DNA of 63,224 bases, filler included, from Octopus bimaculoides (lineage: Eukaryota): assembly GCF_001194135.2 (NCBI RefSeq). It is 4 parts of 4 records of this genome, joined end to end, with 100 filler letters (N's around TTAATTAATTAA, not from the genome) between each part and the next. Parts side by side here need not be neighbours in the genome. Positions count along the whole stretch, not along the records: positions 1 to 29,790 come from NC_069008.1; 3 more parts are not named here. One strand, written 5' to 3'. Of the stretch, positions 2,066 to 24,149 are shown in pieces. The notes beneath the pieces are model-generated. The model was not told where the DNA came from and made no database searches. It was given only the letters and a program-made list of their open reading frames with translations. A program made the position numbers and the translations under genes. Numbering within the stretch: position 1 is the first letter of the stretch; the number at the start of each line of letters is the position of its first letter.

Positions 2066-2117
2066 CTAATGACAGTCGTCAGCACGAATGACAGCAACGA
2101 GATGTCCTACTTCAGAA
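2066..2117 (+). CDS. Gene A coding exon 1, visible 3' end only (LMTVVSTNDSNEMSYFR); the rest lies in the N gap at 1349-2065
   Basis: Reverse-complement match to the 3' end of gene B exon 1 (IMTVVSTNDSNEISFYK). Ends at the GTAAGT donor 2118-2123 in phase 1, same as B. Confidence 0.8.
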
Positions 2118-3939: not shown

Positions 3940-5130
3940 ACAGATTTTGTTGGAATTCTTGGAGTCTTGCATGCGTAGCGGGCATGCTGCTTCCAGCCCA
4001 TGGTACCATGTTATCCGTCCTTTTCAACTAATACTTTCCGGATTATTCTGACCGCGTCAAGGGAGCAAACCTTTTGTAACAGTTCTACTGGGCACTCTTT
4101 TCTACTTTCCTTTATATTCCTCTTGATGCCTTCTGATACTGTCCCTAAGGACCCCTCAGGGATTGGCACTATCTTCACCTGCTTCATTTTCCATTGCTAG
4201 AATATTTCGTACTTAAGAGTGTTGTATTTATCTATTTTTTTCGCCTTCTTTGTTGATTATTCGCGGATCAAAGGGGCGCGCAACATCAACTGTATGGCAC
4301 ATGTGGTGCATCTTGTCGGCAACTACTTGATCCGCTCTGTTTTGCTCTAGCACCTGATTTGTTTGGTTTTGGAAACCTCAGAGGATTTTGCTTGACTGTG
4401 GTTCCACCATTCTCTCCGATTTGTTCTCATACTACGTCTTACCTCTCTCTAACCCCCAATTTCCGCACAGGTTCCAACATCGCACTTTCGCTACCTAACT
4501 GTGTCGCCAAAATTTGTAGTGGTTTTGGACATGTCTAGGCCATTCGTAAGTGATATGAACCATGGTTTCGTCCACTCTATTACAGATGCGGCACAGCGGT
4601 GCAACTTGCTCATTCCTAAGGTTGACCCTCGAATTCGTGGACAAGCCATGACTATGTGCTGCCAGTATAGTGCTGTCAGTCTCTATTTTCAGTGTCCCTT
4701 TCTTCAGTGTTCCTTTTTTCAGCCAATCCCACTTATTTTTTCCAACAACTTCTATTGTGGTTACATGGAAATTATTGTGGAGTCCCTTGTTGCCTTATGC
4801 TTTTCCATATCATTTTTGTATTTCTTCCTTTATTTTGCCGTTTTTTCTAGGTTTTCAATACTCCCTCAGTCCTAACTGCCACTAGCAAGGTTTCCTTACT
4901 TTAGCATAGGTGTCTCATCAAGCTCCCGAGTTCGATACGTACGCAGTCTTCCACACTTATCAGTGCCCTTCCTCCATTTGCTCTTTTCGTGTAGAGACGA
5001 TCAGTGTCTGAAGGTGGATGATGGACTCCATGCATCATTAGAAGCTTTCTTGTCTTCCTGTCCAACTCCTATCTCTCCTCCTCTGTTCACTTCAATATTC
5101 TAGCACCATACCGAACTACTGCGGCTGCGC
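3940..5130 (-). mobile_element. Degenerate 3' part of an R4/Dong-like LINE (thumb region, CCHC knuckle, RLE endonuclease)
   Basis: Frameshifted translation on - gives DRKTRKLLMMHGVHHP...RLY, WDWLKKGTL, PLCRICN, DVARPFD and VELLQKVC...RIIRKVL. Confidence 0.75.
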
Positions 5131-5220
5131 GTGAGTTCATGGCCGAAATAATGTTTCAGGTATTCAGCTTTGAAGCCACTACTACTACTACTTCTACTAC
5201 TACTATCATTATTATTTCAG

Positions 5221-5399
5221 ACAGCCAATGGATTAAAACATATGCCATATCAATGGGAGCTGGTTCGAAAGTCTATAATTCATTCATGAATATCGAAAGT
5301 CCTTCAACCTGGAATGTGGACAAATGCATTGGTACCTTTTGTCCCAACTTCTGCCGACGTCCCATTCTTGATTTCTGGAACTATCTTCCCATTGATGAG
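5221..5399 (+). CDS. Gene A coding exon 2 (SQWIKTYAISMGAGSKVY...PILDFWNYLPIDE)
   Basis: TTTCAG acceptor ending 5220 and GTATGT donor at 5400. 179 nt, phase 1 to 0, open frame; paralogous to 19994-20172. Confidence 0.9.
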
Positions 5400-6298
5400 G
5401 TATGTAGGCATATGCATACACATACACGCGCACACAAACACATATTGTTATTTTCATAATAACAACAATAATGATTAACAGATATTTAGATCAATTCAAT
5501 TGCTTCTGACATTTTTGACCTGTAAAAATTTTATATTATGAAGGCGAAACCNNNNNNNNNNNNNNNNNNNNNNNNNNNNNNNNNNNNNNNNNNNNNNNNN
5601 NNNNNNNNNNNNNNNNNNNNNNNNNNNNNNNNNNNNNNNNNNNNNNNNNNNNNNNNNNNNNNNNNNNNNNNNNNNNNNNNNNNNNNNNNNNNNNNNNNNN
5701 NNNNNNNNNNNNNNNNNNNNNNNNNNNNNNNNNNNNNNNNNNNNNNNNNNNNNNNNNNNNNNNNNNNNNNNNNNNNNNNNNNNNNNNNNNNNATATATAT
5801 ATGACGTATATGTATATGTGTCTGTAGTGGGGTGTATCGGATCTAAAAAGGAATCGGTCGTTTAGGTATTACGATACGTGTTTCAGTAGCAGAAAATTGC
5901 TTTTATTAACACATTGAGTTATACAACTTGACATACAATGACATGAGATTTTTTGTAAGATTATGAAATGAAAAGTTTACCTTAGATTACCACATCTTGT
6001 GGGGGTGGGGGTCAAACTGTATTAGAGGTTAATTAAGCGATATGTACCAGATAGTATCATGGTAGAATATGAAGTTTTCAAGTGACGGGGAATTAAAAAT
6101 AATATTTGACTCATTTAGATAGAGCAAGGTACCGCTTAGGTCAATGACAAATCAATGTCAATAATTTCGTGTGTTAAAGAAATTCTTTACATTCAAAGCA
6201 ATGATGAAGAAAAATGAGAGTGGACATTATGGCTAACATCCAAGGAAATGTATGTTAAATTATCTCGATCTATTTAAATTTATTCACTTATTTTTTTC

Positions 6299-6748: not shown

Positions 6749-6784
<36 letters not shown>

Positions 6785-6807
6785 ATACATGTTCATTTCT
6801 TTTGCAG

Positions 6808-6971
6808 GTTAAACTGGTGATTTATGAAAAACAAACAGCTGTGGTGACTATGATATTTGATGGACGAAATACAACACTTAAAACCTGGTTCTCTCAAAGA
6901 AACTTGAAAAGTTCGCCATGGGTCGATCTAGCTTCAGCCACAAGCCTTCTTTTCTCAGTGGAGGGAGTTTT
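6808..6971 (+). CDS. Gene A coding exon 3 (VKLVIYEKQTAVVTMIFDGRNTT...SSPWVDL...FSVEGV)
   Basis: TTTCTTTTGCAG acceptor and GTATGT donor at 6972. 164 nt, phase 0 to 2; paralogous to 16046-16209. Confidence 0.9.
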
Positions 6972-7814
6972 GTATGTTTCTTTATCTTCTTTGTTGTTTT
7001 GTCTTATTCTGTCATGTAGAGAAATATAATATTAAAAAGCACTTTTCGTAGGCTACGGATATACAGTCTGACACTATACATTTAGACGCGATACTCTGTG
7101 GAGACGAACAACGCATCATATTTCCAGTCTTTCAACAGTATATCTGCATTTGTTATGATATACAGAATGCAAATTTGAACAAATACTGATGTCGTCTGTA
7201 ATGATGAAATATATCCAGACTTCCGGCTAACTACAGTACCGCTGATTTGCTTATCACTATTTTTCTATGTCAAAAGAAGCGAAATTTCTCTTGACCTGCG
7301 GATGCCAACGACTACTTACTACTGATGTGTTTGAATTCATAAGAAATACGGATTTAGCAATTCCGTCGCCATTGCTAGAGGCTGTTTCTCTATTATTAGT
7401 ACATTTCTGTATTTCTAACATTATATATCTAAATGAAATGCTTTCCGGGTGGAGTAAAGCAGTTTCCTGGCTTTCACGTTAAGTGACATGTTTTAAAGTG
7501 ATAAACACGAAAATATTCACCTTAGAATATTGACTTATATCTGTTCGTTTTGAATATTATATTTCATTATATTATTTCTACTGAGCAAAATTTCTTGTAT
7601 GTTTATTTGGCGCTTTGGTAAGATGTTTAACATGGGAAAATATTATCGTTTATAGGTTAGTGGCGTTTTGTGGATTTTTTTACTGAGGTGTGACTCGTGT
7701 GTAGTTTCGCATTTGTTGGCGTATTTACATTTGCACATTTCTACGTGCTTGTATGTTTGTATGTGAGTGTGTGTGCGTATGTGCGTGCGTGTGTATGTAT
7801 ATCTATGTGTATGA

Positions 7815-7870
<56 letters not shown>

Positions 7871-8320
7871 AAATGTATGTGTGTGTGAGTGTAAGACAGA
7901 TCTCGTTGGGAAGAGAATCTATAGATGGCTGTTGGTGATGTCACAGCATATTTTAACACAGACTGCTATAGATCTCTATGTATCATACATAACGTATACT
8001 CATTCACGACAGGCCAGTTACTGCAATATGTGTCCTGCTATAACACCTTGCTCTCACCGGCTGTTGATGGGACGAAGATTTTCTGTCTTTCCGGCATTTA
8101 TTGTGTTCGTAACACAGCAAATCCACATGAGATATTATTCAAGGAAAATATACTATAGTAATTAGTCTATCAACAATGTGAATATACATTAAGTATGATA
8201 CACGGAAGGCAATTTTAAACACTGACTGATTCAGTTTTGTATAGCTGACATATTCATATATTTCATAAATGTTTAGATTTTCATATTCTGAAACCCAACC
8301 AACTTTCATTAACTCCACAG

Positions 8321-8481
8321 CGGAATACGTAGCTTCTATATAGGTAAATTTAAGACATGTTCAAAAATTGGCGGCTGGTTGATTGTCGATGAGATTCCAC
8401 CTTTCTGTTCGTTTCGTTACAAAGGTCATTCTCCTTCAATCCGTTATTCTAATACAAATTTGGAATTCGTATGGAAGAACG
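8321..8481 (+). CDS. Gene A coding exon 4 (GIRSFYIGKFKTCSKIGGWLIVD...PSIRYS...VWKN)
   Basis: AACTCCACAG acceptor and GTAAGT donor at 8482. 161 nt, phase 2 to 1; this frame is not listed in the ORF track. Paralogous to 14994-15154. Confidence 0.9.
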
Positions 8482-8525
8482 GTAAGTGACATTATATCTT
8501 TTCTGGGTGTGTGTGTGCGTGTGTA

Positions 8526-8573
<48 letters not shown>

Positions 8574-8932
8574 TGTGTGTCAGTGTGTGTCTGTGTGTGT
8601 GTGTGTCTATGTATCTGTGTCTCTGTGTGTGTCTGTCTGCCTGTCTGTGTGTGTGTGTGTCTGTGTTTCTCTGTGTGTGTGTGTGTCTGTGTCTGTGTGT
8701 GCGTGCCTGTGTCAGTCTGTGTCTGTGTGTGACTATGAGTGGTAATAGTAGAAGTTATTTTCGTACTTAATGTTCAGCAACCAATCAGGCTTGATTCAGC
8801 TGATTTTATGATTAAAAGCGTTCTGACCGGGAATCGACTGCTATTTCTAGTAATTCGAGCTACCACGTGTAAAGTCTTCCCACGATATATTAGAATTCCT
8901 TTTCTTGTTGATGTTGTTATTGTTACTTCCAG

Positions 8933-8988
8933 GTTATCCATTAGCAGATTCCATGGCCATATTCATCCGCTTGAGGCAGCAGAACTAA
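8933..8988 (+). CDS. Gene A terminal coding exon 5 (GYPLADSMAIFIRLRQQN*)
   Basis: TTACTTCCAG acceptor, phase 1, TAA at 8986-8988, AATAAA 100 nt downstream; paralogous to 14639-14688. Confidence 0.88.
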
Positions 8989-9087
8989 CCTAGCACATAA
9001 TATCCATTGATTCTATTGGTTTCGTTAACCTCCATCCAATCCAGCTGACCACCACTAGTGATCCACATAAGTCACGTCTTGCCTGTT

Positions 9088-9093
9088 AATAAA
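9088..9093 (+). terminator. Polyadenylation signal of gene A
   Basis: AATAAA 100 nt after the stop codon; the same position is conserved in paralog B. Confidence 0.7.
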
Positions 9094-9319
9094 GAATCCA
9101 TATAAATATTGTATCTAGCATCGGTCTTTTGAGTTGTGATTCTCTTTCTCTGCTTTCAGAGACAGAGCTGTTGTTGTTGTTTTTTCCAATTCGCGTGTTT
9201 GTTTGTTTGTGTTCGTGCTTGAGTGCGTATGTGTAGATAGATATCTGAGGTTTTGTCTCTGTGCCGTAAGGAAAAATCTCTCAGCAAATCAAGGAGACCA
9301 AAACAATAATACTAATTGC

Positions 9320-10510
9320 AGAAGGGGAAGTGAAAAATAACCGCCGTTTGGTCAAAACATTCTTATGGTCGGTCGCACCACCTTGAACGGTCACATGGTA
9401 TGCTCCCGATTACGTAACCGACGTTCCACCTTGACCGCTCCACTTTTCTTTCTTGTGTTACAGAGTAAACATGGCCGCTCCACTGGCAATGTGCATCAAG
9501 GAAGAACAGCAACCAGTGACCCGATTTCTCTGGTCTGAATGTGTGTCAGTGGCTTAAATTCATCGCAGGCGTTCAGTACTATACTGGAACAGAGCTTTAC
9601 TGCGCAGAAGTGTGTATCAGTGAAACGGGAAGTTTTAAATCTCTGAACAAGATTGAATTGGATCAAGAAGTTTTAAAATGGCCGAATAAGCGCGAAGTAT
9701 GAGAACAGAGCAAAAGGTCCATCAACCTCTGTCATTACGAGAAGATTTAACAAGTTCGAGAGATAGCTGCTGCAAACGCACGAGTGACTATCGATTGTGC
9801 GGCATGGTTTCTACAAATTAATCATGGCTCTGTGTACGAAATCATCCACTAAAATGCTNNNNNNNNNNNNNNNNNNNNNNNNNNNNNNNNNNNNNNNNNN
9901 NNNNNNNNNNNNNNNNNNNNNNNNNNNNNNNNNNNNNNNNNNNNNNNNNNNNNNNNNNTCTACAAATTAATCATGGCTCTGTGTACGAAATCATCCACTA
10001 AAATGCTTAACTTCCGTAAAATCTATGTGTAATGGGTTCCAATAAAGATTACCGAAGCGCATTAGGGAAATCGAGTGGAGATCCGTCAGAGTTTATTTGA
10101 CAGCTACAATGATGAAAGCAAAGCATTTATGGAGATAGCAGTCACAAGAGATGAGACCTGCGTCCATCATTTTGAGCCAGAATCGAAAAGACAGAATGGA
10201 AACATCCGGAATCGATAGCGAAAAAGTAATTCATGACTGAACCTTCTACGGAAAAAGTGATGCTAACTGTATTTGGGGATGCAAACGAGCCTATACATGA
10301 ACATTGCCTGGAAAAGGGGTCTATTGTCACTAGTGTAGGCTACAATGAAATGGCAGCCAACAAACTGAAACCAGCAATTCGCATCAAACACCAAAGTCTA
10401 TTGTTAAAGTATGAATTATTGTCGGACGACAATGCACGCTCGCATTCGGCCAGCCACACTATTGAAACCATGGAGTCATCAAAATTGTGAGCCACTGGAA
10501 GAAGCACATG
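9320..10510 (+). mobile_element. Mariner (DD34D-type) transposase relic, multiply frameshifted
   Basis: MAAPLAMC.KEEQ N-terminus, RFLWSE, WVP, DETCVHHFEPESKRQ, KVMLTVFGDA, KLKPAIR and DDNARSH (HDNARPH-like). Confidence 0.85.
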
Positions 10511-10991
10511 GAAAATCAAGAAGACTATGGCGAAAAATGAAATAAATATACACAAACATCTTTTGTATTTACTTTTACTGGTCCCAGCTAGAGGCTGCGG
10601 CCATGCTAGAGTACCACCCTTAGTGTGAGGTGTTTTTATTTTACACTAAATTCCAAGCTTTCATCTCCGGCATTATGTCTGGTGAAGTGGCGAGTTAGAC
10701 GGAGTTGTTCATCTTTGTGATCCCTGCTGCCATGTGGGCTCATCTGGTACATTAGATAAAAATTTAACAAATATACCTTGCAGATCTCTGAAATGTTTTG
10801 GTAGAGTGCTGAAAGGATACAGGCCTTTGAAATCTTACAGTGCTAAGTCCTTACACTAGATGGAGAAGATGCGATATTTGGAATCTTGCAATGATGTCCA
10901 AATCGGTAGTTGTAATAGATTGCAATACCAAATGTGGAAAATGGCCTTCCAGGAACACACACACACACACACACACACATACACACACACA

Positions 10992-11025
<34 letters not shown>

Positions 11026-11613
11026 NNNNNNNNNNNNNNNNNNNNNNNNNNNNNNNNNNNNNNNNNNNNNNNNNNNNNNNNNNNNNNNNNNNNNNNNNNN
11101 NNNNNNNNNNNNNNNNNNNNNNNNNNNNNNNNNNNNNNNNNNNNNNNNNNNNNNNNNNNNNNNNNNNNNNNNNNNNNNNNNNNNNNNNNNNNNNNNNNNN
11201 NNNNNNNNNNNNNNNNNNNNNNNNNNNNNNNNNNNNNNNNNNNNNNNNNNNNNNNNNNNNNNNNNNNNNNNNNNNNNNNNNNNNNNNNNNNNNNNNNNNN
11301 NNNNNNNNNNNNNNNNNNNNNNNNNNNNNNNNNNNNNNNNNNNNNNNNNNNNNNNNNNNNNNNNNNNNNNNNNNNNNNNNNNNNNNNNNNNNNNNNNNNN
11401 NNNNNNNNNNNNNNNNNNNNNNNNNNNNNNNNNNNNNNNNNNNNNNNNNNNNNNNNNNNNNNNNNNNNNNNNNNNNNNNNNNNNNNNNNNNNNNNNNNNN
11501 NNNNNNNNNNNNNNNNNNNNNNNNNNNNNNNNNNNNNNNNNNNNNNNNNNNNNNNNNNNNNNGTAAACATACCAACATTGTTTATCAAGCGATATTGGTG
11601 GGCAGGGGCAATC

Positions 11614-11694
<81 letters not shown>

Positions 11695-12539
11695 CGACAT
11701 GCTTCTTTCAGTTCCCGTCTACCAAATCCACTCTCAAGGCTTTGGTAGAAGACACTTACCCAAAGTGCCACGCAGTGGTACCAAACCCGGAACCATGAGG
11801 TTGGTAAGCAAGATTCTTACCAGTACCACATAGCCATTCCTGCACCTAGGTCACAATATATTTATTGAAATTTTAGCCCTAGGTGGATTATGAATTAATG
11901 ATCTTCAGATATTGAATGTAACTACTGGTTATTAAATCAGATACAACTAAATATATGTGGAATGATGAACTTATTTTTCTTTGTATAAATTAGATTTTAA
12001 ATTAAATACGGTTTCGTCCTCCTATGTGTATTGCAAGAATTCTTAATATAAATAGTTTTACTTATAGAGAACACTGATTTCTACTTGAAAGTCAAACCAG
12101 ATACTACACTGACATTTGCCATGTAAACTCGGTCACCTCCTATTTACGTGGTAGTTACTAAATCATAAGTTCGTCTCATGGAAGTTTTTATAATCCCTTC
12201 TGTAGAGGTGAGAATATCTTAAGTCTTGTTCCAGCCTATTCTTAAGCAACTGATGTTTAGCCATGAAAACATGGAATATTTCCTAAATACATAAATTTTA
12301 CCTCTTTGCTCCAACTAGGTAACGTTCAACTACGCCTAATTATATCGCATTCTATATTAAAGTTAGTATTTCTAACGTTAAGAAACCAGATAAACACACT
12401 TAAGCTGGTGCTATGCATTTTCTCTCTATCCTTTCCATAGGACATGGGTTTCGTTAACTCCGTGAATGCTTGCAACAATGTGTAGTATTTGTTGGAAGCA
12501 GCGGCGGCAAAAAAAAAAAAGAGCCGGGCTGACTGTGGA

Positions 12540-14357
12540 AACAAAACAGTCAGTGTCACGCACAGTGAGTTACGTCTTACTGTCGATCATTTGCCTTTTC
12601 TTTAGATCAACCAGCAAGGAAAAGTGGGAGAGGAAATCTGCCCTACGTATCGGGTACAGTAGATCGGTAACTAAAATACCTCACTGGAAGCATTGTTCGA
12701 GTCGTATATTCAAGGTGAGAGAAATTTCGACATATGTGGTAAAGGGTGATTTGTTGACCGCTTGCAAGATAGTGGCTGAAGGACAAGGTTTTCTGTGCGT
12801 ATATTTGGCTTGCCAGATACTACAGGCAGCTTCTGAGTCAATCAGGAAGCTCCTCTGGGAAATTCATCTTTGGTAAAAATTGCACCACTTGGAGGGATGA
12901 TACCAGAAACAGTGGCCGTACTTACTGCTCCGTTTGGGCGTTTCCCTAGGTATTATTTGAATGAGGTGGTGTGCATTTCCTTGCCTTGGCACCGAAGTTG
13001 GTATGGTACCAACATACCGATCCATTATTGCCGACGTATTGATATATGGATAGAGATTTAGAGCGGGATCGGCATCTTGCATGTAGGACTGTATTCTTTT
13101 CCAAACGAAGGTTGCGGACTTCCGCTACTAAGTCTTCGATTGTTTTTTTTTTTTTCTGTGGCGCGTNNNNNNNNNNNNNNNNNNNNNNNNNNNNNNNNNN
13201 NNNNNNNNNNNNNNNNNNNNNNNNNNNNNNNNNNNNNNNNNNNNNNNNNNNNNNNNNNNNNNNNNNNNNNNNNNNNNNNNNNNNNNNNNNNNNNNNNNNN
13301 NNNNNNNNNNNNNNNNNNNNNNNNNNNNNNNNNNNNNNNNNNNNNNNNNNNNNNNNNNNNNNNNNNNNNNNNNNNNNNNNNNNNNNNNNNNNNNNNNNNN
13401 NNNNNNNNNNNNNNNNNNNNNNNNNNNNNNNNNNNNNNNNNNNNNNNNNNNNNNNNNNNNNNNNNNNNNNNNNNNNNNNNNNNNNNNNNNNNNNNNNNNN
13501 NNNNNNNNNNNNNNNNNNNNNNNNNNNNNNNNNNNNNTTTTCTCCGCTGACAGGGAATTCCGCCGTAGAATCTCGGCTTTATCAGAAGTATAGCTGGCGT
13601 CCATAGGTGGATTTGTAATTATACCCCTGACTTCACTGGGGAGAGCAGGTGGCAAAAGACTTACCAGAAGATGCAAACGCTGCGTTTCGGACGACACATG
13701 GTTTGCTGCAAAGTAGGATTCCATTTTAGCAACCCAACCGGAAACGTCTCCGGTGAAAATAGGCACAGGTGGATGAGAAACAGCAGCTGTGGAACGTGAG
13801 GCCATTGTTACTTGCCGAGTGTGTGAGTCTGGAGAAAGAAATGTCGCTATGATGCTCGGCATTGCCACGTGAGAAATGTTTTGCGTTTCTCCAACGTCGG
13901 ATTCACCACTTTGGTGAGTATATGTGTGTTTCCATTGTTAGGTTGGCGATGTACTGATTAGGTGTCGGCTGCGTGTAAATGAAGAATAAACACACACTAA
14001 ATATAACAATTTTTATTTTGTTGGAGATGCGTTGCAAGATGTTATGGCATTTTGGCATGTGCCGTTTACTGTGAGAGAGGCGTCGCGACACTACGTGTAG
14101 GGGACTGAAGCACAGAAAAAGAGCTAGCAGTCCTAGCTGTGGGCAGTTGACGAGCTGACTGCCCAAAAGGGAAAAGAGAAAGAGCCCTGTCAGTCGGGCT
14201 CTTTACATGCCTTTCACGACTTCCGTTAAGGGCTGCTGTGTTTTGCGCATGCTTCGTGACTGCCCGCTTCGTCCCTTCCGGGCCTTTTATCTTTAGCCCT
14301 GAGAAATGCCAAGGAGGCACGATGAGTATGCTACAGACAAAACGTCAGATATCTACA
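12540..14357 (-). mobile_element. Truncated Ty3/Gypsy LTR retrotransposon: LTR, PBS, gag and protease
   Basis: Gag N-terminal region (VSHPPVPIFTGD...IITNPP...Y...EILRR) at 13550-13810; WYHTNFGAKARKC knuckle at about 12970-13010; protease-like FLIDSEAAC...ADFLSHFSLLVDL at 12590-12850. PBS-like TGGTGAATCCGACGT at 13908-13894 follows a CACCA LTR end. The LTR 5' boundary is approximate. Confidence 0.8.
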
Positions 14358-14524
14358 TACGCACACTCATGCACGCACACACGCACGCACGCACGCACAC
14401 ACACACACGCACGCACACACACACACACACACGTGAACTAGAACATCAACAACAGCTCTGTCTCTGGAGTCAGAGAATGCAAATCACAACTCAAAAGACG
14501 GACTTAGAATATTTACACGGATTC

Positions 14525-14530
14525 TTTATT
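14525..14530 (-). terminator. Polyadenylation signal of gene B
   Basis: TTTATT on + (AATAAA on -), about 110 nt past the stop codon and homologous to 9088-9093. Confidence 0.7.
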
Positions 14531-14638
14531 AACAGGTAACACTTGACCTATTCGGATCATTGGTGGTGGTCAGCTGGATTGGATGGACGTTAACAACAAC
14601 ATCAGTAGTATCAATGGATATCATGTGCTGGGTTAGTT

Positions 14639-14688
14639 CTACTGCCTCAGGCGGATGAATATGGCCAAGGAATCTGCTAATGCATAAC
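14639..14688 (-). CDS. Gene B terminal coding exon 5 (GYALADSLAIFIRLRQ*)
   Basis: TTACTTGCAG acceptor and TAG at 14641-14639. Spliced CDS is 295+179+164+161+50 = 849 nt, or 282 aa, with no internal stop. Confidence 0.88.
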
Positions 14689-14867
14689 CTGCAAGTAACA
14701 GTAACAACATCAACAACAAAAAGAAATTGAAGCAAATCGTGGAAAATCTTTATACGTGGTCATTCGAATTACTAGAAACACCAGCCGAATCTTTAAATCG
14801 TTGAGTGGGAAACATACAGGAGGGTCATGGTCGGAATGCTTTTAATGATAAATCAGTTGAATCAAAG

Positions 14868-14965
<98 letters not shown>

Positions 14966-14993
14966 TACACACACAAAATAAAATATCACTTAC

Positions 14994-15154
14994 CTTTGTT
15001 CCATACGACTTTCTTGTTTTTATGAGAATAACGGATTGAAGGAGAATGAGCTTTGTAACCAAACGAACAGGAAGGTGGAACCTCATCGATAACCAACCAG
15101 CCATTCGCTGTTGGACATTGACCGCTTTTTGCTATATGGAAGCGACGTATTTCA
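14994..15154 (-). CDS. Gene B coding exon 4 (EIRRFHIAKSGQCPTANGWLVID...PSIRYS...VWNK)
   Basis: AACTCCACAG acceptor and GTAAGT donor, 161 nt, phase 2 to 1. Confidence 0.9.
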
Positions 15155-16045: not shown

Positions 16046-16209
16046 CCAAGTCCGTTCATTGAGAAATGAAAGTTGGTGGATGAAGCTAGATCGTTCCAGG
16101 GTGAACTTTTCAAGTTTGCATGAGAGAACCAGCTTTCAAGGGTTGTATTTCGTCCATCAAATATTATGGTTACGACAGCAGCTTGTTTTTTATAAATCAC
16201 CAGTTTCAC
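16046..16209 (-). CDS. Gene B coding exon 3 (VKLVIYKKQAAVVTIIFDGRNTTLESWFS...SSPWNDL...FSMNGL)
   Basis: TTCTTTTACAG acceptor and GTATGT donor, 164 nt, phase 0 to 2. Confidence 0.9.
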
Positions 16210-16271: not shown

Positions 16272-17911
16272 TTGACACACACACATGTATAAGTATATAT
16301 ATGTGTCATATATGTGACATGAACGAAGTTTCACCTGATGTGCATGGATATTACGGATTGTACTGTAATGATACCGGGTATATAGGCTCAGGAGTGGCTG
16401 TGTGGCAGGGTTCAGTCCCACTGTGTGGAACCTTGGGCAAGTATCTTCTACTACAAGCTGGGGTTGACCAAAGCATTGTGAGAGGAGGATTTGGTACATG
16501 GAAACTGAAAGAAGCCCGTCTTATATATATANNNNNNNNNNNNNNNNNNNNNNNNNNNNNNNNNNNNNNNNNNNNNNNNNNNNNNNNNNNNNNNNNNNNN
16601 NNNNNNNNNNNNNNNNNNNNNNNNNNNNNNNNNNNNNNNNNNNNNNNNNNNNNNNNNNNNNNNNNNNNNNNNNNNNNTGTGTGTGTGTGTGTGTGTGTGT
16701 GAGTGTATGTGTGTGTGTACGTGCGTGTGTGTGTATTTGTGTGTCTGTTTTTGCCCCCCACCATCACTTAACAACCGATGTTGGTGTGTTTACGACGGCG
16801 TAAGTTAGCGGTTCGGCAAAAGAGACCGATAAAAAAGTACTAAGCTTACAAAAAACAGGTTGGGGGTCAATTCGTTCAACTAAAGGCAGTGCTCTAGCAT
16901 GGCCACTATCAAATGGCTGAAGCGAATAAAAGAGTAATGTGGACTAAGTTCGTATGGACTATGCGACTCGCGGAACCGCGCGTAGCGACGGATTAAATAC
17001 TTATAAATCCCATTTATGGATTATTATTACTATAACAATGTTTATCCTACTTTGAATCGGAACCATTGGGCGGCAGCCAACACAATGAAATAGCAACTTT
17101 TATACGCGTACACAAAATAGTGTCCCGTGAACGAACTTATAAGTATCTGCGTGAGTGTGTGTGTGCGTGTACGTAAATGTCGAACAATGAGAAATAAGGA
17201 TTCAAAACCGCATTGTTGTTTAAAATTTCTTCATTTGTGTATTAAGGCTACTATTGGTTTCCTTTAAAGATGAATGTCTTAATATGGTAACGACTTTTTA
17301 AGCCGATTACCTGGAGGGAGGGTGGTCGTCTCCATTGTGGATGAAAACACGAAAAATCTCTGAGAGAAATGTTTCGTGATTGACACATCTAGTAAAGAAA
17401 AAGCAATCAAGGGGCGCTACTCTCTGATGATAACTTTTGAGTGATTATCTCCCTTGGACTTGACTTGTGAGGGAAACTACCATGTTGCAAAGTGAATTTG
17501 CTTGCGTTATATCATATTATATTCTTGGTGTATGTGATGTTCTTATGTTTGTGTACTGATGTAGTTCATCAGAATGAAGGGTATGTATCTCTTATGTGCG
17601 GAGTTCATGTATTGGATATATTCAATGTTCACGCTTCAAGAAAGCAACTATCCTGCTGGGATTCGTGGCGTTGGTGGTGGTTCCTTTTTGAAATGTCGGA
17701 ATCTGAAATATTGCGTGTGTATGCAGCGACAGAAATTTCAACCCTAATATTTAAGATGTTATTTGTTGACTGTATGATATTTAACTTCATATATATATAT
17801 ATATATATCAATAATAATAGGACCCCGGGGAGATGTAGTATCCCATATTTTATAATATTTTATATGTATGAATCGTTCTGGATATTGCATCGAAATGTTC
17901 ATAGGTTATTT

Positions 17912-19993: not shown

Positions 19994-20172
19994 CTCATCA
20001 ATTGGAAGATAGTTCCAGAAATCAAGAATGGGATGTCGGAAGAAGTTGGGACAAAAGTTCCCTTTGCATTTGACCACTTTCCAGGTTGAAGGACTTTCGA
20101 TATTCATGAATGAATTATAGACTTTCGAACGAGCTCCCATTGATATGGCATATGTTTTAATCCATTGGCTGT
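19994..20172 (-). CDS. Gene B coding exon 2
   Basis: TTTCAG acceptor and GTATGT donor, 179 nt. Only 10 nt differences from gene A exon 2. Confidence 0.9.
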
Positions 20173-20187
20173 CTGAAATAATAATGA

Positions 20188-20241
<54 letters not shown>

Positions 20242-20294
20242 CTTCAAAGCTGAATACCTGAAACATAATTTCGGCCATGAACTCACGCGCAGCC

Positions 20295-21939: not shown

Positions 21940-22627
21940 CCTGTTGTTCATTTCGTGTCCTAGTCTGTGTATGAGTATAGCTTCCTTAATTCTTAGATTA
22001 CCCAAATTTCTTTCCTCGGCCTCAATTGTGACTGTTATGCTTTTGTCGGTGTTCCGGCATCTGTCTAGATGTTTTCTGAAGGAGGAGGCTCTCGCGTTCA
22101 GATGTTCTTTGATGCGGACGTGTAACGGTCNNNNNNNNNNTGTTTTCTGAAGGAGGAGGCTCTCGCGTTCAGATGTTCTTTGATGCGGACGTGTAACGGT
22201 CTTGTTGTGCTACCCACATAGAACTTGTTGCATTTGTTACATTGTATTCTATGCACAGCATTTACCCGTTGGCATAAATCTGTGTCACGGATGGGACAAT
22301 TTAATTTGCATTGATTGCTGTCCCTTATTCGTTTCTTTGCGAGGTGTCCTCTCAGAGAGGGGCTGGAGTGGGCTAGTTGTATGTCTAGCTTTCTCTTCTT
22401 ATGGCTCTTCAGATGGCTGTAGTTATCCTCTCGCTAAAACGGGGTATTTTAAGGAAGCATCTGTTGCTGGGTTTTCTATGTGTTCGGCGTGCTGGTCGTC
22501 TTGGGTACTTAAGCCGATTTACAATGGATCTAGGGTACCCGTTGGTTTTCAATATATCTAGGAAGCGTGTGGAGTGGGTCACCCTGTCCTCCATTCTGCT
22601 GCACTTATCCTAGATGTGTGCAAGTTC
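21940..22627 (-). mobile_element. Penelope-like element 3' portion with GIY-YIG endonuclease
   Basis: On -: ILKTNGYPRSIV, then YRIQCNKCNKFYVGSTTRPLHVRIKEH...LRIKEAILI. Confidence 0.85.
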
Positions 22628-23284: not shown

Positions 23285-23579
23285 ATTTATAGAAGGAAAT
23301 CTCGTTGCTGTCATTCGTGCTGACGACTGTCATTATATTTTTCGGTGAGTAATTCTTACAAACATGGCTGACTTTGTGGTAAGTGAAAAATTGCGATTGG
23401 CTCCTCTGAGAGAGTGCGGTGCAGTCGAATAGATTTCGTGTTGAAGAGAATTGTTCTGCTGGAGATGGCTGAAGGTAAGCATAAGAATAACCAGGACCCA
23501 AAGATTTGTAATAGGCCTCAAGTTCCTGATCTGAGGTAACAACCAGAATTGTTGTAAGGGTTAACAGCAGCACTTCCAT
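23285..23579 (-). CDS. Gene B coding exon 1: signal peptide plus PAN/apple-like module (MEVLLLTLTTILVVTS-DQELEAYY...DCTAL...FFTY...VCKNY...ISFYK)
   Basis: ATG at 23579-23577 in a good context (GCTACAATGG) followed by a hydrophobic N-terminus. GTAAGT donor at 23284-23279; 295 nt, ending in phase 1. The PAN-like call rests on the C..., F-x-Y...C spacing and is an inference. Confidence 0.85.
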
Positions 23580-24149
23580 TGTAGCTAGACGGGTAAAATG
23601 AAACTGAGACATTCTTGGGTCTAAGATCACCAGAGGAAGAAAGAAGGGGGAAAGAAATGTCATGAAAGAGAGAAAGAAAGGAGCAGGGAGATATTGGAGA
23701 AGATTCGGCAAAGGGTCAAGGCGAAATTTAATATATAAAGAGAGAACGGAGAAGAGAAAGACAGAGAGGGCAGGAAAGAGTTAGAGAGTATCTGAGAGAA
23801 ATCCTGAAAAAGAAGAAAGAGACACACAATGAGAAGAGGGAAAACGTCTGTGTGTGAGAAGAAGGATGTTTGGAAGATAAAACGAAGAGGAATAAATTAC
23901 AATTTAAAACAGAAAATTTCAAATAAATTAGGGTCATTAGCAAAGCTGCAAGTCCTGGGTATGATTTTAAACTGTATCTTTTACGGGGGGCCCTGGTTGG
24001 GGATTTCCAATGTTTTGAGGAGTTTGGAATCGCTTCTTAGCCACTGCTGTTTGAAAGTCTACAGTGACCAGGAGTAGAAGTACTTGTGAATGTCCCAGCT
24101 GTGGGTTAATTAGTAATTCAGTCGATCGGATGGCGCTCATTAGACATAC

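What the first reader, a model, noticed from the sequence alone, without database searches (positions are those of the whole stretch)
8321..15154. Exon 4 differs between paralogs almost only at amino-acid-changing sites
Hand codon alignment of 8321-8481 against 14994-15154: of 53 codons, 24 differ nonsynonymously and only 1 (AAT/AAC) purely synonymously. Changes cluster around the first Cys (GKFKTCSKIG vs AKSGQCPTAN) and the end (NTNLEFVWKN vs HKNKKVVWNK), while GWL, C-S-F and SPSIRYS stay fixed. Inference: diversifying selection on a ligand-binding surface, as seen in immune-recognition, toxin or gamete-recognition proteins.
Basis: partly seen in the sequence, partly recalled or inferred. Interest (0 to 1): 0.75.

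Follow-up and report, generated by a model that had tools for sequence, protein, structure and literature searches.

The report
Hypervariable exon in octopus paralog pair
Two neighbouring octopus genes for secreted, probably ligand-binding proteins differ most in one exon that encodes loops around two fixed cysteines, but the tests run here do not clearly show positive selection rather than loose constraint plus patchwork gene conversion.

Summary
Exon 4 of copy A (8321-8481, +) and copy B (15154-14994, -) differ at 25 of 53 codons: 24 change the amino acid and 1 is silent. The window is Octopus bimaculoides DNA. A and B are convergent, tail-to-tail paralogs of a large, unnamed family (more than 50 octopod proteins). 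Each protein has a signal peptide, a PAN/apple domain and a ~190-aa C-terminal domain with no Pfam model. That domain has over 1,100 relatives in marine invertebrates and resembles fibrinogen-related domains only weakly. The three assembly gaps in the range lie in the spacer between the two stop codons, so no reading frame crosses them.

Exon 4 is the family's hypervariable part. It also carries the superfamily's only invariant residues, two cysteines. Pairwise dN/dS for A versus B is 1.8-2.0, not significant (p about 0.2). My own M1a/M2a site tests are significant (p = 0.001-0.005; 0 of 49 null simulations reach the observed value). The signal mostly disappears once synonymous rate may vary among sites (p = 0.06-0.33). 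Differences pile up in the first 18 codons, next to a block conserved at nucleotide level, and gene conversion between partners is visible. Diversifying selection is plausible but unproven.

The parts
2066..2117 (+). Copy A (NCBI LOC106882933), visible 3' end of exon 1 (…MTVVSTNDSNEMSYFR). The 5' part, with signal peptide and PAN/apple domain, is lost in gap 1349-2065.
   Evidence: P0004 and P0029 match
5221..5399 (+). Copy A exon 2 (SQWIKTY…LPIDE). It lies in a block 91% identical to the other arm.
6808..6971 (+). Copy A exon 3. The last 16 codons (6922-6969) are hypervariable across the family.
8321..8481 (+). Copy A exon 4, the finding. It has three parts: a hypervariable stretch at 8322-8375 (codons 1-18, with the first Cys); a conserved block at 8376-8450 (GWL…C…HSPSIRYS); and a variable tail at 8451-8480.
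8933..8988 (+). Copy A exon 5 (G-YPLADSMAIFIRLRQQN-stop). Its frame is correct only if exon 4 is included.
   Evidence: P0029
8989..14638 (.). Spacer between the two convergent stop codons. It holds all three assembly gaps of the finding's range (9859-9958, 11026-11562, 13167-13537) and a mariner-type transposase remnant.
14639..14688 (-). Copy B exon 5 (G-YALADSLAIFIRLRQ-stop)
14994..15154 (-). Copy B exon 4. The hypervariable stretch is 15153-15100, the conserved block 15099-15025 and the variable tail 15024-14995.
16046..16209 (-). Copy B exon 3
19994..20172 (-). Copy B exon 2
23285..23612 (-). Copy B exon 1. It encodes MSQFHFTRLATMEVLLLTLTTILVVTS (signal-peptide-like) followed by a PAN/apple-like domain. 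The start could instead be the inner Met at 23579.
   Evidence: family alignment; Foldseek PAN hits

Best explanation
The window holds two intact, convergent paralogs from a large octopod tandem family of secreted proteins. Each protein has a signal peptide, a PAN/apple domain and a ~190-aa C-terminal domain. That domain is undescribed and is probably a distant relative of fibrinogen-related domains (FReD).

Exon 4 encodes the C-terminal core of that domain: R-x-F, Cys, G-W, Cys, Pro and Y-S, conserved across phyla. Between these fixed residues lie loops that vary freely. By analogy with the FReD P-subdomain, these loops would form the ligand-contacting region.

The loops change amino acids at or slightly above the local neutral rate. 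Gene conversion between the two arms, and among other paralogs, homogenises other parts of the genes to different degrees.

My reading is that paralog specificities are diversifying in these loops, with some positive selection at a minority of codons.

Shown: the gene structure, family membership, hypervariability, conserved scaffold, and an omega of about 1 overall.

Inferred: the binding role, the disulfide bond between the two cysteines, and the selective cause.
For: Gene models and splice phases are. The RefSeq protein P0029 includes exon 4 and has the exon 5 frame predicted here.

The family has 53 hits, all octopod, most about 295 aa.

Among 29 members, exon 4 shows 0.40 mean identity, against 0.69-0.71 for exon 2 and the first 38 residues of exon 3.

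Across a broad alignment covering molluscs, echinoderms and a bacterium (amphioxus relatives), the only invariant columns are the two Cys of exon 4. R123, G138, W139 and Y162 are near-invariant.

For A versus B, dN is 0.300 in exon 4 and 0.106 in exons 1-3. Pooled flanking introns give JC = 0.209 over 895 sites, so dN/K(intron) = 1.44, p = 0.054. For codons 1-18 the ratio is 2.77, p = 0.0009, a segment chosen after looking at the data.

Site models (my own code), M2a versus M1a:
- 12 sequences: LRT 13.5, p = 0.001, omega2 = 2.8 in 31% of codons.
- A/B clade, 6 sequences: LRT 11.6, p = 0.003.
- 4 taxa: LRT 10.5.
- Exon 2 control: LRT 0.27.
- 0 of 49 simulations under M1a reached 11.58; the maximum was 5.5.

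High-posterior codons lie in predicted loops next to the two Cys.

For domain identity, Foldseek gives PAN/apple matches for the N-terminal domain with probability >= 0.95. It gives recurrent weak FReD matches for the C-terminal domain. A Myxococcota relative has three FReD-length units in which Pfam Fibrinogen_C positions 4-52 are followed by this domain.
Against: No pairwise dN/dS is significantly above 1.

A_bim versus A_sin gives dN 0.276 against a local intron K of 0.37.

When site classes may differ in overall (synonymous) rate, a fast neutral class fits better than M2a. The omega > 1 term then adds little: LRT 3.65 (p = 0.056) for 6 taxa, 0.95 for 4 taxa, 1.76 for 12 taxa.

Within exon 4, codons 1-18 have both pN = 0.40 and pS = 0.34, while codons 19-43 have pS = 0 of 17 sites. 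This points to a mosaic history.

In O. vulgaris, A and B are 90% identical over the 3' two-thirds of exon 4 and 57% over the first 57 nt. For the flanking introns the distance is K = 0.13 over the first 60 nt downstream and 0.86 upstream. That is a conversion tract.

Sites chosen from the other clade do not predict where A and B differ.

The FReD link fails Pfam and sequence search against the PDB, and Foldseek E-values are only 0.04-0.4.

There are no expression, binding or polymorphism data. The codon-model code is my own, with NJ trees and only 53-54 codons.
Confidence: 0.5

Rival explanations
1. There is no adaptive diversification. The loops encoded by exon 4 are simply unconstrained (omega = 1) between a few strictly conserved scaffold residues. 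Patchy gene conversion among the many paralogs gives neighbouring segments different ages. Clusters of old differences next to freshly homogenised stretches then mimic an excess of replacement changes and fool constant-dS site models.
For: Omega is 0.96 in the A/B clade and 0.73 family-wide, neither significantly different from 1. A rate-variable neutral model fits better than M2a, and the LRTs drop to 0.95-3.65. Both pS and pN are raised in codons 1-18, and pS is zero in codons 19-43. A conversion tract is visible in O. vulgaris. Arm identity varies by block: 91% around exon 2, 83.5% around exon 3, 75% around exon 4, 82% around exon 5. Seven codons carry multiple hits.
Against: Exon 4 non-synonymous sites are more diverged than 895 flanking intron sites: ratio 1.44 overall and 2.77 in codons 1-18. 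B_sin versus B_vul gives dN/K(intron) = 1.86, p = 0.013. Only one silent-only codon is seen where about 5 are expected, p = 0.026. M2a beats M1a in every subset, and no null simulation comes close. The pS estimate in codons 1-18 comes only from path-averaging in multi-hit codons.
Confidence: 0.38
2. Exon 4 is a decaying or usually skipped exon in one or both copies. Older gene models splice exon 3 directly to exon 5, so the replacement changes would be neutral drift in non-coding sequence.
For: UniProt A0A0L8FKA6 (P0004) and several O. vulgaris models (P0005, P0036, P0042) skip exon 4. The exon as a whole is as diverged as the intron, or more so.
Against: All 12 exon 4 copies examined have open frames. 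Ten also show clear AG/GT splice signals; the P0013/P0017 acceptors could not be placed and N16_bim lacks a GT at the expected position. Skipping the 161-nt exon shifts the frame of exon 5 and destroys the conserved ADSMAIFIRL end. RefSeq models include the exon (P0029, P0007-P0017). The exon holds the superfamily's only invariant residues. About 35% of its codons have omega near 0.
Confidence: 0.04
3. The inverted pair is an assembly artefact, for example two haplotypes or a mis-join at the gaps, so the comparison is between alleles or is meaningless.
For: The window has 14 gaps. The chromosome-level assembly carries the same gaps. A perfect 61-bp duplication flanks the 10-N gap at 22131-22140.
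Against: The same convergent pair, with a spacer of about 5 kb, is present gap-free in O. sinensis (L001) and O. vulgaris (L002). The arms differ by 18-25% in introns, far above allelic divergence. The copies have different stop positions, which are shared with their counterparts in the other species.
Confidence: 0.02

Closest known systems
Fibrinogen-related domain proteins (Pfam PF00147): ficolins, tachylectin-5, angiopoietins, and molluscan FREPs such as those of Biomphalaria glabrata
   Same: These are secreted proteins with a C-terminal globular domain of about 200 aa. That domain has a Cys…G-W…Cys segment near its end, which in FReDs (my recollection of the consensus) forms the ligand pocket. 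Like FREPs, this family is expanded in tandem in a mollusc and is most variable in that segment. Foldseek repeatedly lists FGL1, fibrinogen D, ficolins and angiopoietins. A bacterial relative joins a Pfam-recognised FReD A-subdomain to this domain.
   Different: There is no Pfam Fibrinogen_C hit, even at E = 10, and no sequence hit to any FReD in the PDB. Foldseek E-values are 0.04-0.4 with TM <= 0.41. The octopus proteins lack the CDM-x-GGGW A-subdomain. They carry a PAN/apple domain at the N-terminus rather than IgSF or collagen. There is no evidence of lectin activity, immune induction or somatic diversification.
PAN/apple-domain proteins (HGF N domain, plasminogen, factor XI, Toxoplasma MIC4, Sarcocystis lectin SML-2)
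   Same: The N-terminal domain matches these folds with Foldseek probability 0.95-1.0. The family profile hits the MIC4 and factor XI apple domains. Pfam PAN_1 is found in the Mytilus and crinoid homologues.
   Different: The PAN part is not where the finding lies. It is moderately conserved (0.61 identity). For copy A it is missing from the window, in a gap.
Multigene families in which a binding exon stays diverse while gene conversion homogenises the rest (for example MHC peptide-binding exons). This is an analogy only.
   Same: The pattern is a block-wise mosaic of arm identity: the exon 2 block is 91% identical and the exon 4 block 75%. Conversion tracts stop at the hypervariable segment.
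   Different: The proteins are unrelated. No polymorphism data exist here, and selection against homogenisation has not been shown.

Membership tests
Fibrinogen-related domain (Pfam PF00147) | Match to the Fibrinogen_C profile at or above the gathering score | tested here: not met
   Pfam scan of full-length B at E <= 10 lists no Fibrinogen_C. Scans at E <= 0.01 of the Mytilus and Nucella homologues also find none.
Fibrinogen-related domain (Pfam PF00147) | FReD fold, meaning a significant structural match to solved FReDs | tested here: inconclusive
   The AF2 models have pLDDT 72.6 and 81.2. FReD chains recur among the hits, but only at E = 0.04-0.4 and TM 0.3-0.41.
Fibrinogen-related domain (Pfam PF00147) | N-terminal A-subdomain with the C-D-M-x-x-x-G-G-G-W motif | tested here: not met
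   The motif is absent in the octopus proteins, which have a PAN/apple domain instead. It is present just upstream of this domain in the Myxococcota relative P0079.
Fibrinogen-related domain (Pfam PF00147) | Ligand or Ca2+ binding by the P-subdomain | not testable with these tools
   This needs protein and binding assays or a solved structure.
PAN/apple domain | PAN fold or profile match in the N-terminal ~80 aa | tested here: met
   Foldseek probability is 0.95-1.0 to the HGF N domain, plasminogen, MIC4 and SML-2. The family profile hits MIC4 at E = 0.003. Pfam PAN_1 is found in homologues. Pfam does not reach threshold on B itself.
Octopod PAN + C-domain family (unnamed; LOC106882933 and relatives) | Full-length similarity and a shared five-exon structure with the same phases | tested here: met
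   E-values run from 1e-133 to 1e-42 against 53 octopod proteins. Exon boundaries are conserved in 12 genes from 3 species.
Genes under diversifying (positive) selection | dN/dS significantly above 1 over the region | tested here: not met
   For A versus B, omega is 1.8-2.0 with p = 0.18-0.19. All 15 pairs give 0.5-1.84, none significant. M0 omega is 0.96 and 0.73.
Genes under diversifying (positive) selection | Site-model test (M2a versus M1a) with a class of omega > 1 | tested here: met
   LRTs are 10.2-13.5 with p = 0.001-0.006. Of 49 null simulations, 0 reached 11.58. The exon 2 control is negative. The code is my own.
Genes under diversifying (positive) selection | Signal robust to synonymous-rate variation and recombination | tested here: inconclusive
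   With free class rates the LRTs are 3.65 (p = 0.056), 0.95 and 1.76. Gene-conversion tracts are present.
Genes under diversifying (positive) selection | Selected residues form one exposed surface | not testable with these tools
   Only secondary structure and pLDDT are returned. The candidate codons lie in predicted loops beside the two Cys.

The most novel reading that the evidence does not exclude
Octopods may carry a lineage-expanded repertoire of dozens of tandem genes per species for secreted PAN/apple plus cryptic fibrinogen-like recognition proteins. In this reading, a disulfide-framed loop encoded by exon 4 is kept diverse by positive selection and escapes the gene conversion that homogenises the rest of each gene. 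That would be a cephalopod counterpart of snail FREPs, built on a domain family that has no description or Pfam model despite more than 1,100 relatives in marine invertebrates.
Probability: 0.3. Interest if true: 0.65.

Novelty: new member of a known kind. Interest (0 to 1): 0.4.

Why it matters
Cephalopods lack adaptive immunity, and their recognition molecules are poorly known. A large, fast-diverging family of secreted binding-type proteins is a candidate for innate immune, mucosal, chemosensory or reproductive recognition.

The work also brings to light a widespread extracellular domain that is not in Pfam. It occurs in molluscs, echinoderms, hemichordates, amphioxus, a flatworm and some bacteria, and may be a cryptic branch of the fibrinogen-related superfamily.

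The case is also a methodological warning. A 24:1 codon count and a significant M2a test can arise largely from mosaic gene conversion and site-to-site rate variation in tandem or inverted paralogs.

Tried and rejected
- **Pfam on the exon 4 peptides and on full-length B:** nothing relevant.
- **Family profiles against PDB sequences:** no hit for the C-terminal domain.
- **Literature searches** (octopus with apple or PAN domain, LOC identifiers, fibrinogen-related): nothing on this family.
- **Fetching more paralog DNA:** 4 of 12 look-ups gave no DNA, either because the gene range was too long or because the product was not on record. The codon set therefore stayed at 12 genes.
- **The chromosome-level O. 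bimaculoides assembly:** it has the same gaps, so it cannot close them.
- **Cross-validation:** hypervariable codons defined in the other clade did not separate fast from slow codons in the A-B pair.
- **Predicting the structure of spliced copy B:** I used P0008, the counterpart of A in O. sinensis, and P0029, which is copy A.
- **Mapping residues on a surface:** impossible, because no coordinates are returned.
- **Assembly-artefact and pseudo-exon readings:** rejected for the reasons given under the rival explanations.


Full report
**Where the window comes from**

The window is Octopus bimaculoides DNA. It matches chromosome record CM046628.1 of GCA_001194135.2 at 100% identity, starting near 13.636 Mb. 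That record has the same gaps as the window.

A self-comparison shows a large inverted duplication centred near position 11,810:

| Left arm | Right arm | Identity |
|---|---|---|
| 2067-2229 | 23335-23172 | 74% |
| 4929-5551 | 20488-19848 | 91% |
| 6750-7010 | 16267-16009 | 83.5% |
| 7542-8535 | 15946-14942 | 75% |
| 8831-9234 | 14791-14393 | 82% |

**Gene models**

Each arm holds one five-exon gene, and the two genes converge tail to tail.

| Exon | Copy A (+) | Copy B (-) |
|---|---|---|
| 1 | 2066-2117 (3' end only; the rest is in gap 1349-2065) | 23612-23285 |
| 2 | 5221-5399 | 20172-19994 |
| 3 | 6808-6971 | 16209-16046 |
| 4 | 8321-8481 | 15154-14994 |
| 5 | 8933-8988 | 14688-14639 |

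The exons of A and B listed here have AG/GT borders and matching phases.

RefSeq protein LOC106882933 (P0029) is exactly A with exon 4 included. An older UniProt model (P0004) skips exon 4. Because the exon is 161 nt long, skipping it reads exon 5 out of frame.

**Gaps (tested first, as asked)**

The three gaps inside the finding's range all lie between the two stop codons, at 8988 and 14639. Nothing coding crosses them. Sequence on both sides of the first gap is contiguous in gap-free O. sinensis and O. vulgaris DNA. The same convergent pair, about 5 kb apart, exists in both species.

**The observation**

Random placement of the 36 nucleotide differences predicts 5.2 silent-only codons, and P(<= 1) = 0.026.

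Seven codons carry 2-3 differences, so the per-site estimates are less extreme:
- Nei-Gojobori: Sd = 5.0 over 33.5 sites and Nd = 31.0 over 125.5 sites. This gives dS = 0.166, dN = 0.300 and omega = 1.8, with one-sided p = 0.18.
- Pairwise ML: omega = 2.0, LRT 1.74, p = 0.19.
- For comparison, exons 1-3 give dN = 0.106 and omega = 0.61.

**What the protein is**

B encodes 282 aa from the inner Met at 23579, or 293 aa if translation starts at the upstream Met at 23612. It begins with a signal-peptide-like stretch. A database search finds 53 relatives, all from octopods (O. bimaculoides, O. sinensis, O. vulgaris, Argonauta hians). Most are about 295 aa, they cluster on single chromosomes, and all are unnamed.

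Pfam finds nothing in B. The AF2 models have pLDDT 72.6 for P0008, the counterpart of A in O. sinensis, and 81.2 for P0029, which is copy A and covers the C-terminal domain only.

The N-terminal domain matches PAN/apple folds: the HGF N domain, plasminogen, MIC4 and the SML-2 lectin, with probability 0.95-1.0. The family profile also hits the MIC4 and factor XI apple domains.

The C-terminal domain matches only weakly. FGL1, fibrinogen D, ficolins and angiopoietins recur among the hits, at E = 0.04-0.4 and TM <= 0.41.

An exhaustive profile search shows that the C-terminal domain is widespread. There are 1,119 cluster representatives at E <= 1e-3. They include:
- PAN + domain proteins of about 300 aa in Mytilus, with similar ~300-aa uncharacterised relatives in Nucella, Potamilus, Gigantopelta and Elysia;
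- proteins in starfish, crinoids, Saccoglossus and Macrostomum, several of them multi-copy, and multi-copy proteins in Branchiostoma, one of them joined to a ZP module;
- one Myxococcota protein.

In the bacterial protein, three units of 221-238 aa each begin with Pfam Fibrinogen_C positions 4-52 (CDMTTDGGGW) and continue with this domain. I therefore regard the domain as a probable, unproven, divergent branch of the fibrinogen-related fold. It has no Pfam model, and I found no literature on it.

**What exon 4 encodes**

Across 29 octopod members, mean pairwise identity differs sharply by region:

| Region | Mean pairwise identity |
|---|---|
| Exon 2 | 0.69 |
| Exon 3, first 38 residues | 0.71 |
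| Exon 3, last 16 residues | 0.37 |
| Exon 4 | 0.40 |

Yet in a cross-phylum alignment the only invariant columns are the two cysteines of exon 4. R-x-F, G-W and Y are nearly invariant. Exon 4 is therefore a fixed scaffold carrying free loops.

In the model, the variable stretches fall in predicted loops: residues 130-136 around Cys133, 144-149 before Cys149, and 163-168 and 171-173. The A/B clade has also lost the Asp of C-x-x-D-x-G-W, which other octopod clades and most distant relatives keep.

**Selection tests**

I extracted exons 2-4 from 12 genes of three species. I wrote a GY94/F3x4 codon-likelihood program that uses NJ trees.

| Data set | M0 omega | M2a vs M1a LRT | p | Notes |
|---|---|---|---|---|
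| Exon 4, 12 sequences | 0.73 | 13.5 | 0.001 | omega2 = 2.8 in 31% of codons |
| Exon 4, A/B clade (6) | 0.96 | 11.6 | 0.003 | omega2 = 4.2 in 19% of codons |
| Exon 4, 5 taxa | - | 10.2 | 0.006 | |
| Exon 4, 4 taxa | - | 10.5 | 0.005 | |
| Exon 4, other clade (6) | - | 7.3 | 0.026 | |
| Exon 2 (control) | 0.44 | 0.27 | n.s. | |
| Exon 3 | 0.46 | 14.5 | 0.0007 | candidate sites only in the last 16 codons |

Forty-nine data sets simulated under M1a gave a maximum LRT of 5.5.

High-posterior codons sit at alignment columns 8-18, 29-31 and 53-54.

**Why this is not conclusive**

1. When site classes are allowed their own overall rate, a fast neutral class fits better than M2a, and adding omega > 1 gives little:

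| Data set | LRT | p |
|---|---|---|
| Exon 4, A/B clade (6 taxa) | 3.65 | 0.056 |
| Exon 4, 4 taxa | 0.95 | 0.33 |
| Exon 4, 12 taxa | 1.76 | 0.18 |
| Exon 3, 12 taxa | 3.89 | 0.049 |

2. Exon 4 is a mosaic. In every A/B pair the first 57 nt are 54-61% identical and the remainder 75-90%. Between A and B, codons 1-18 show pN = 0.40 and pS = 0.34, while codons 19-43 show pN = 0.10 and pS = 0 of 17 sites. About 35 nt (TACAAAG.TCATTCTCCTTCAATCCGTTATTCT) are almost unchanged in all six sequences.

3. Gene conversion is visible. In O. vulgaris, A and B share the 3' two-thirds of exon 4. The first 60 nt of the downstream intron have K = 0.13, against 0.86 upstream. Arm identity in O. bimaculoides varies block by block.

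4. A and its O. sinensis counterpart give omega = 1.13 and dN below the local intron divergence. Their exon 4 neighbourhood is also much more diverged (about 29%) than the spacer shared by the two species (11-17%). This again suggests non-orthologous patches.

5. Sites picked in the other clade do not predict the A-B differences.

6. From my own knowledge, not tested here: silent sites in coleoid genes can be constrained by RNA-editing structures, which would inflate dN/dS.

**Evidence pointing the other way**

Non-synonymous sites of exon 4 are more diverged than 895 flanking intron sites: 0.247 against 0.182, a JC ratio of 1.44, p = 0.054. For codons 1-18 the ratio is 2.77, p = 0.0009, though that segment was chosen after looking at the data. 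B_sin versus B_vul gives dN/K(intron) = 1.86, p = 0.013.

**Verdict**

The genes are intact members of a large, uncharacterised family of secreted proteins, and exon 4 is that family's variable module on an ancient scaffold. A binding role is plausible from the domain types, but it is an inference.

Diversifying selection is one of two live explanations, and I put it at about 0.5. Unconstrained loops combined with mosaic gene conversion is the other, at about 0.4. The two can be separated with more paralogs, recombination-aware tests, polymorphism data and a structure.

Noticed in passing
window 8376-8450 and 15099-15025; L001 and L002 exon 4: About 35 nt of exon 4 (TACAAAG.TCATTCTCCTTCAATCCGTTATTCT) are nearly identical in all six A/B-clade copies from three species. 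There is no silent change (0 of 17 synonymous sites between A and B), although the flanking introns differ by 18-30%. The cause could be recent conversion, a splicing signal, or an RNA structure.
   Followed up: partly
window 4929-5551 and 20488-19848: The block around exon 2 is 91% identical between the arms, intron included, against 75% around exon 4. This suggests a younger gene-conversion tract. The block also carries a reverse-transcriptase-like ORF fragment on the opposite strand (4904-5068), which has no Pfam hit.
   Followed up: partly
L002 25980-26143 vs 20103-20263 (O. vulgaris): Copy B of O. vulgaris shares the 3' two-thirds of exon 4 and the start of the next intron with its partner A, but not the 5' 57 nt. 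This is a clear conversion breakpoint inside the exon. B_vul also has a one-codon insertion before the first Cys.
   Followed up: partly
window 10066-10487 (+): A mariner-type transposase remnant lies in the spacer between the genes (Pfam Transposase_1, E = 1e-4). The region 9959-10569 is 89% identical to the same spacer in O. sinensis and O. vulgaris, so the insertion predates the species split.
   Followed up: partly
window 22101-22433 (-): An ORF with a GIY-YIG nuclease motif (Pfam E = 3.5e-4) sits inside intron 1 of copy B. It looks like a Penelope-like retroelement fragment and is interrupted by the 10-N gap.
   Followed up: no
window 22070-22130 and 22141-22201: A perfect 61-bp direct duplication lies on either side of the 10-N gap at 22131-22140. 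It is most likely an assembly overlap that was not merged.
   Followed up: no
window 9024-9113 and 14502-14600; L001 21806-22728: A unit of about 94 bp lies just downstream of each stop codon (it includes the frame-shifted 'VNLHPIQLTTT' reading). It is single-copy in each O. bimaculoides arm. Downstream of copy B it forms a tandem array of about 8 copies in O. sinensis and about 5 in O. vulgaris.
   Followed up: no
proteins P0004, P0005, P0036, P0037, P0042 (public gene models): Several public models of this family skip exon 4 and therefore end in a frame-shifted tail (…ISRLHGHIHPPEAAELT…), or they fuse neighbouring genes. These are probably annotation errors, though real exon skipping has not been excluded.
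   Followed up: partly
protein P0079 (Myxococcota) residues ~1540-2194: A bacterial protein carries three tandem units in which a canonical fibrinogen A-subdomain motif is followed by the invertebrate domain studied here. This hints at horizontal transfer, or at an old link between this domain and fibrinogen-related domains.
   Followed up: partly
window 11563-11848 and 16408-16531; many sites in L001 and L002: A dispersed repeat of about 200-280 bp, 74-87% identical, occurs in the spacer, in intron 2 of copy B, and at several places in the O. sinensis and O. vulgaris loci.
   Followed up: no
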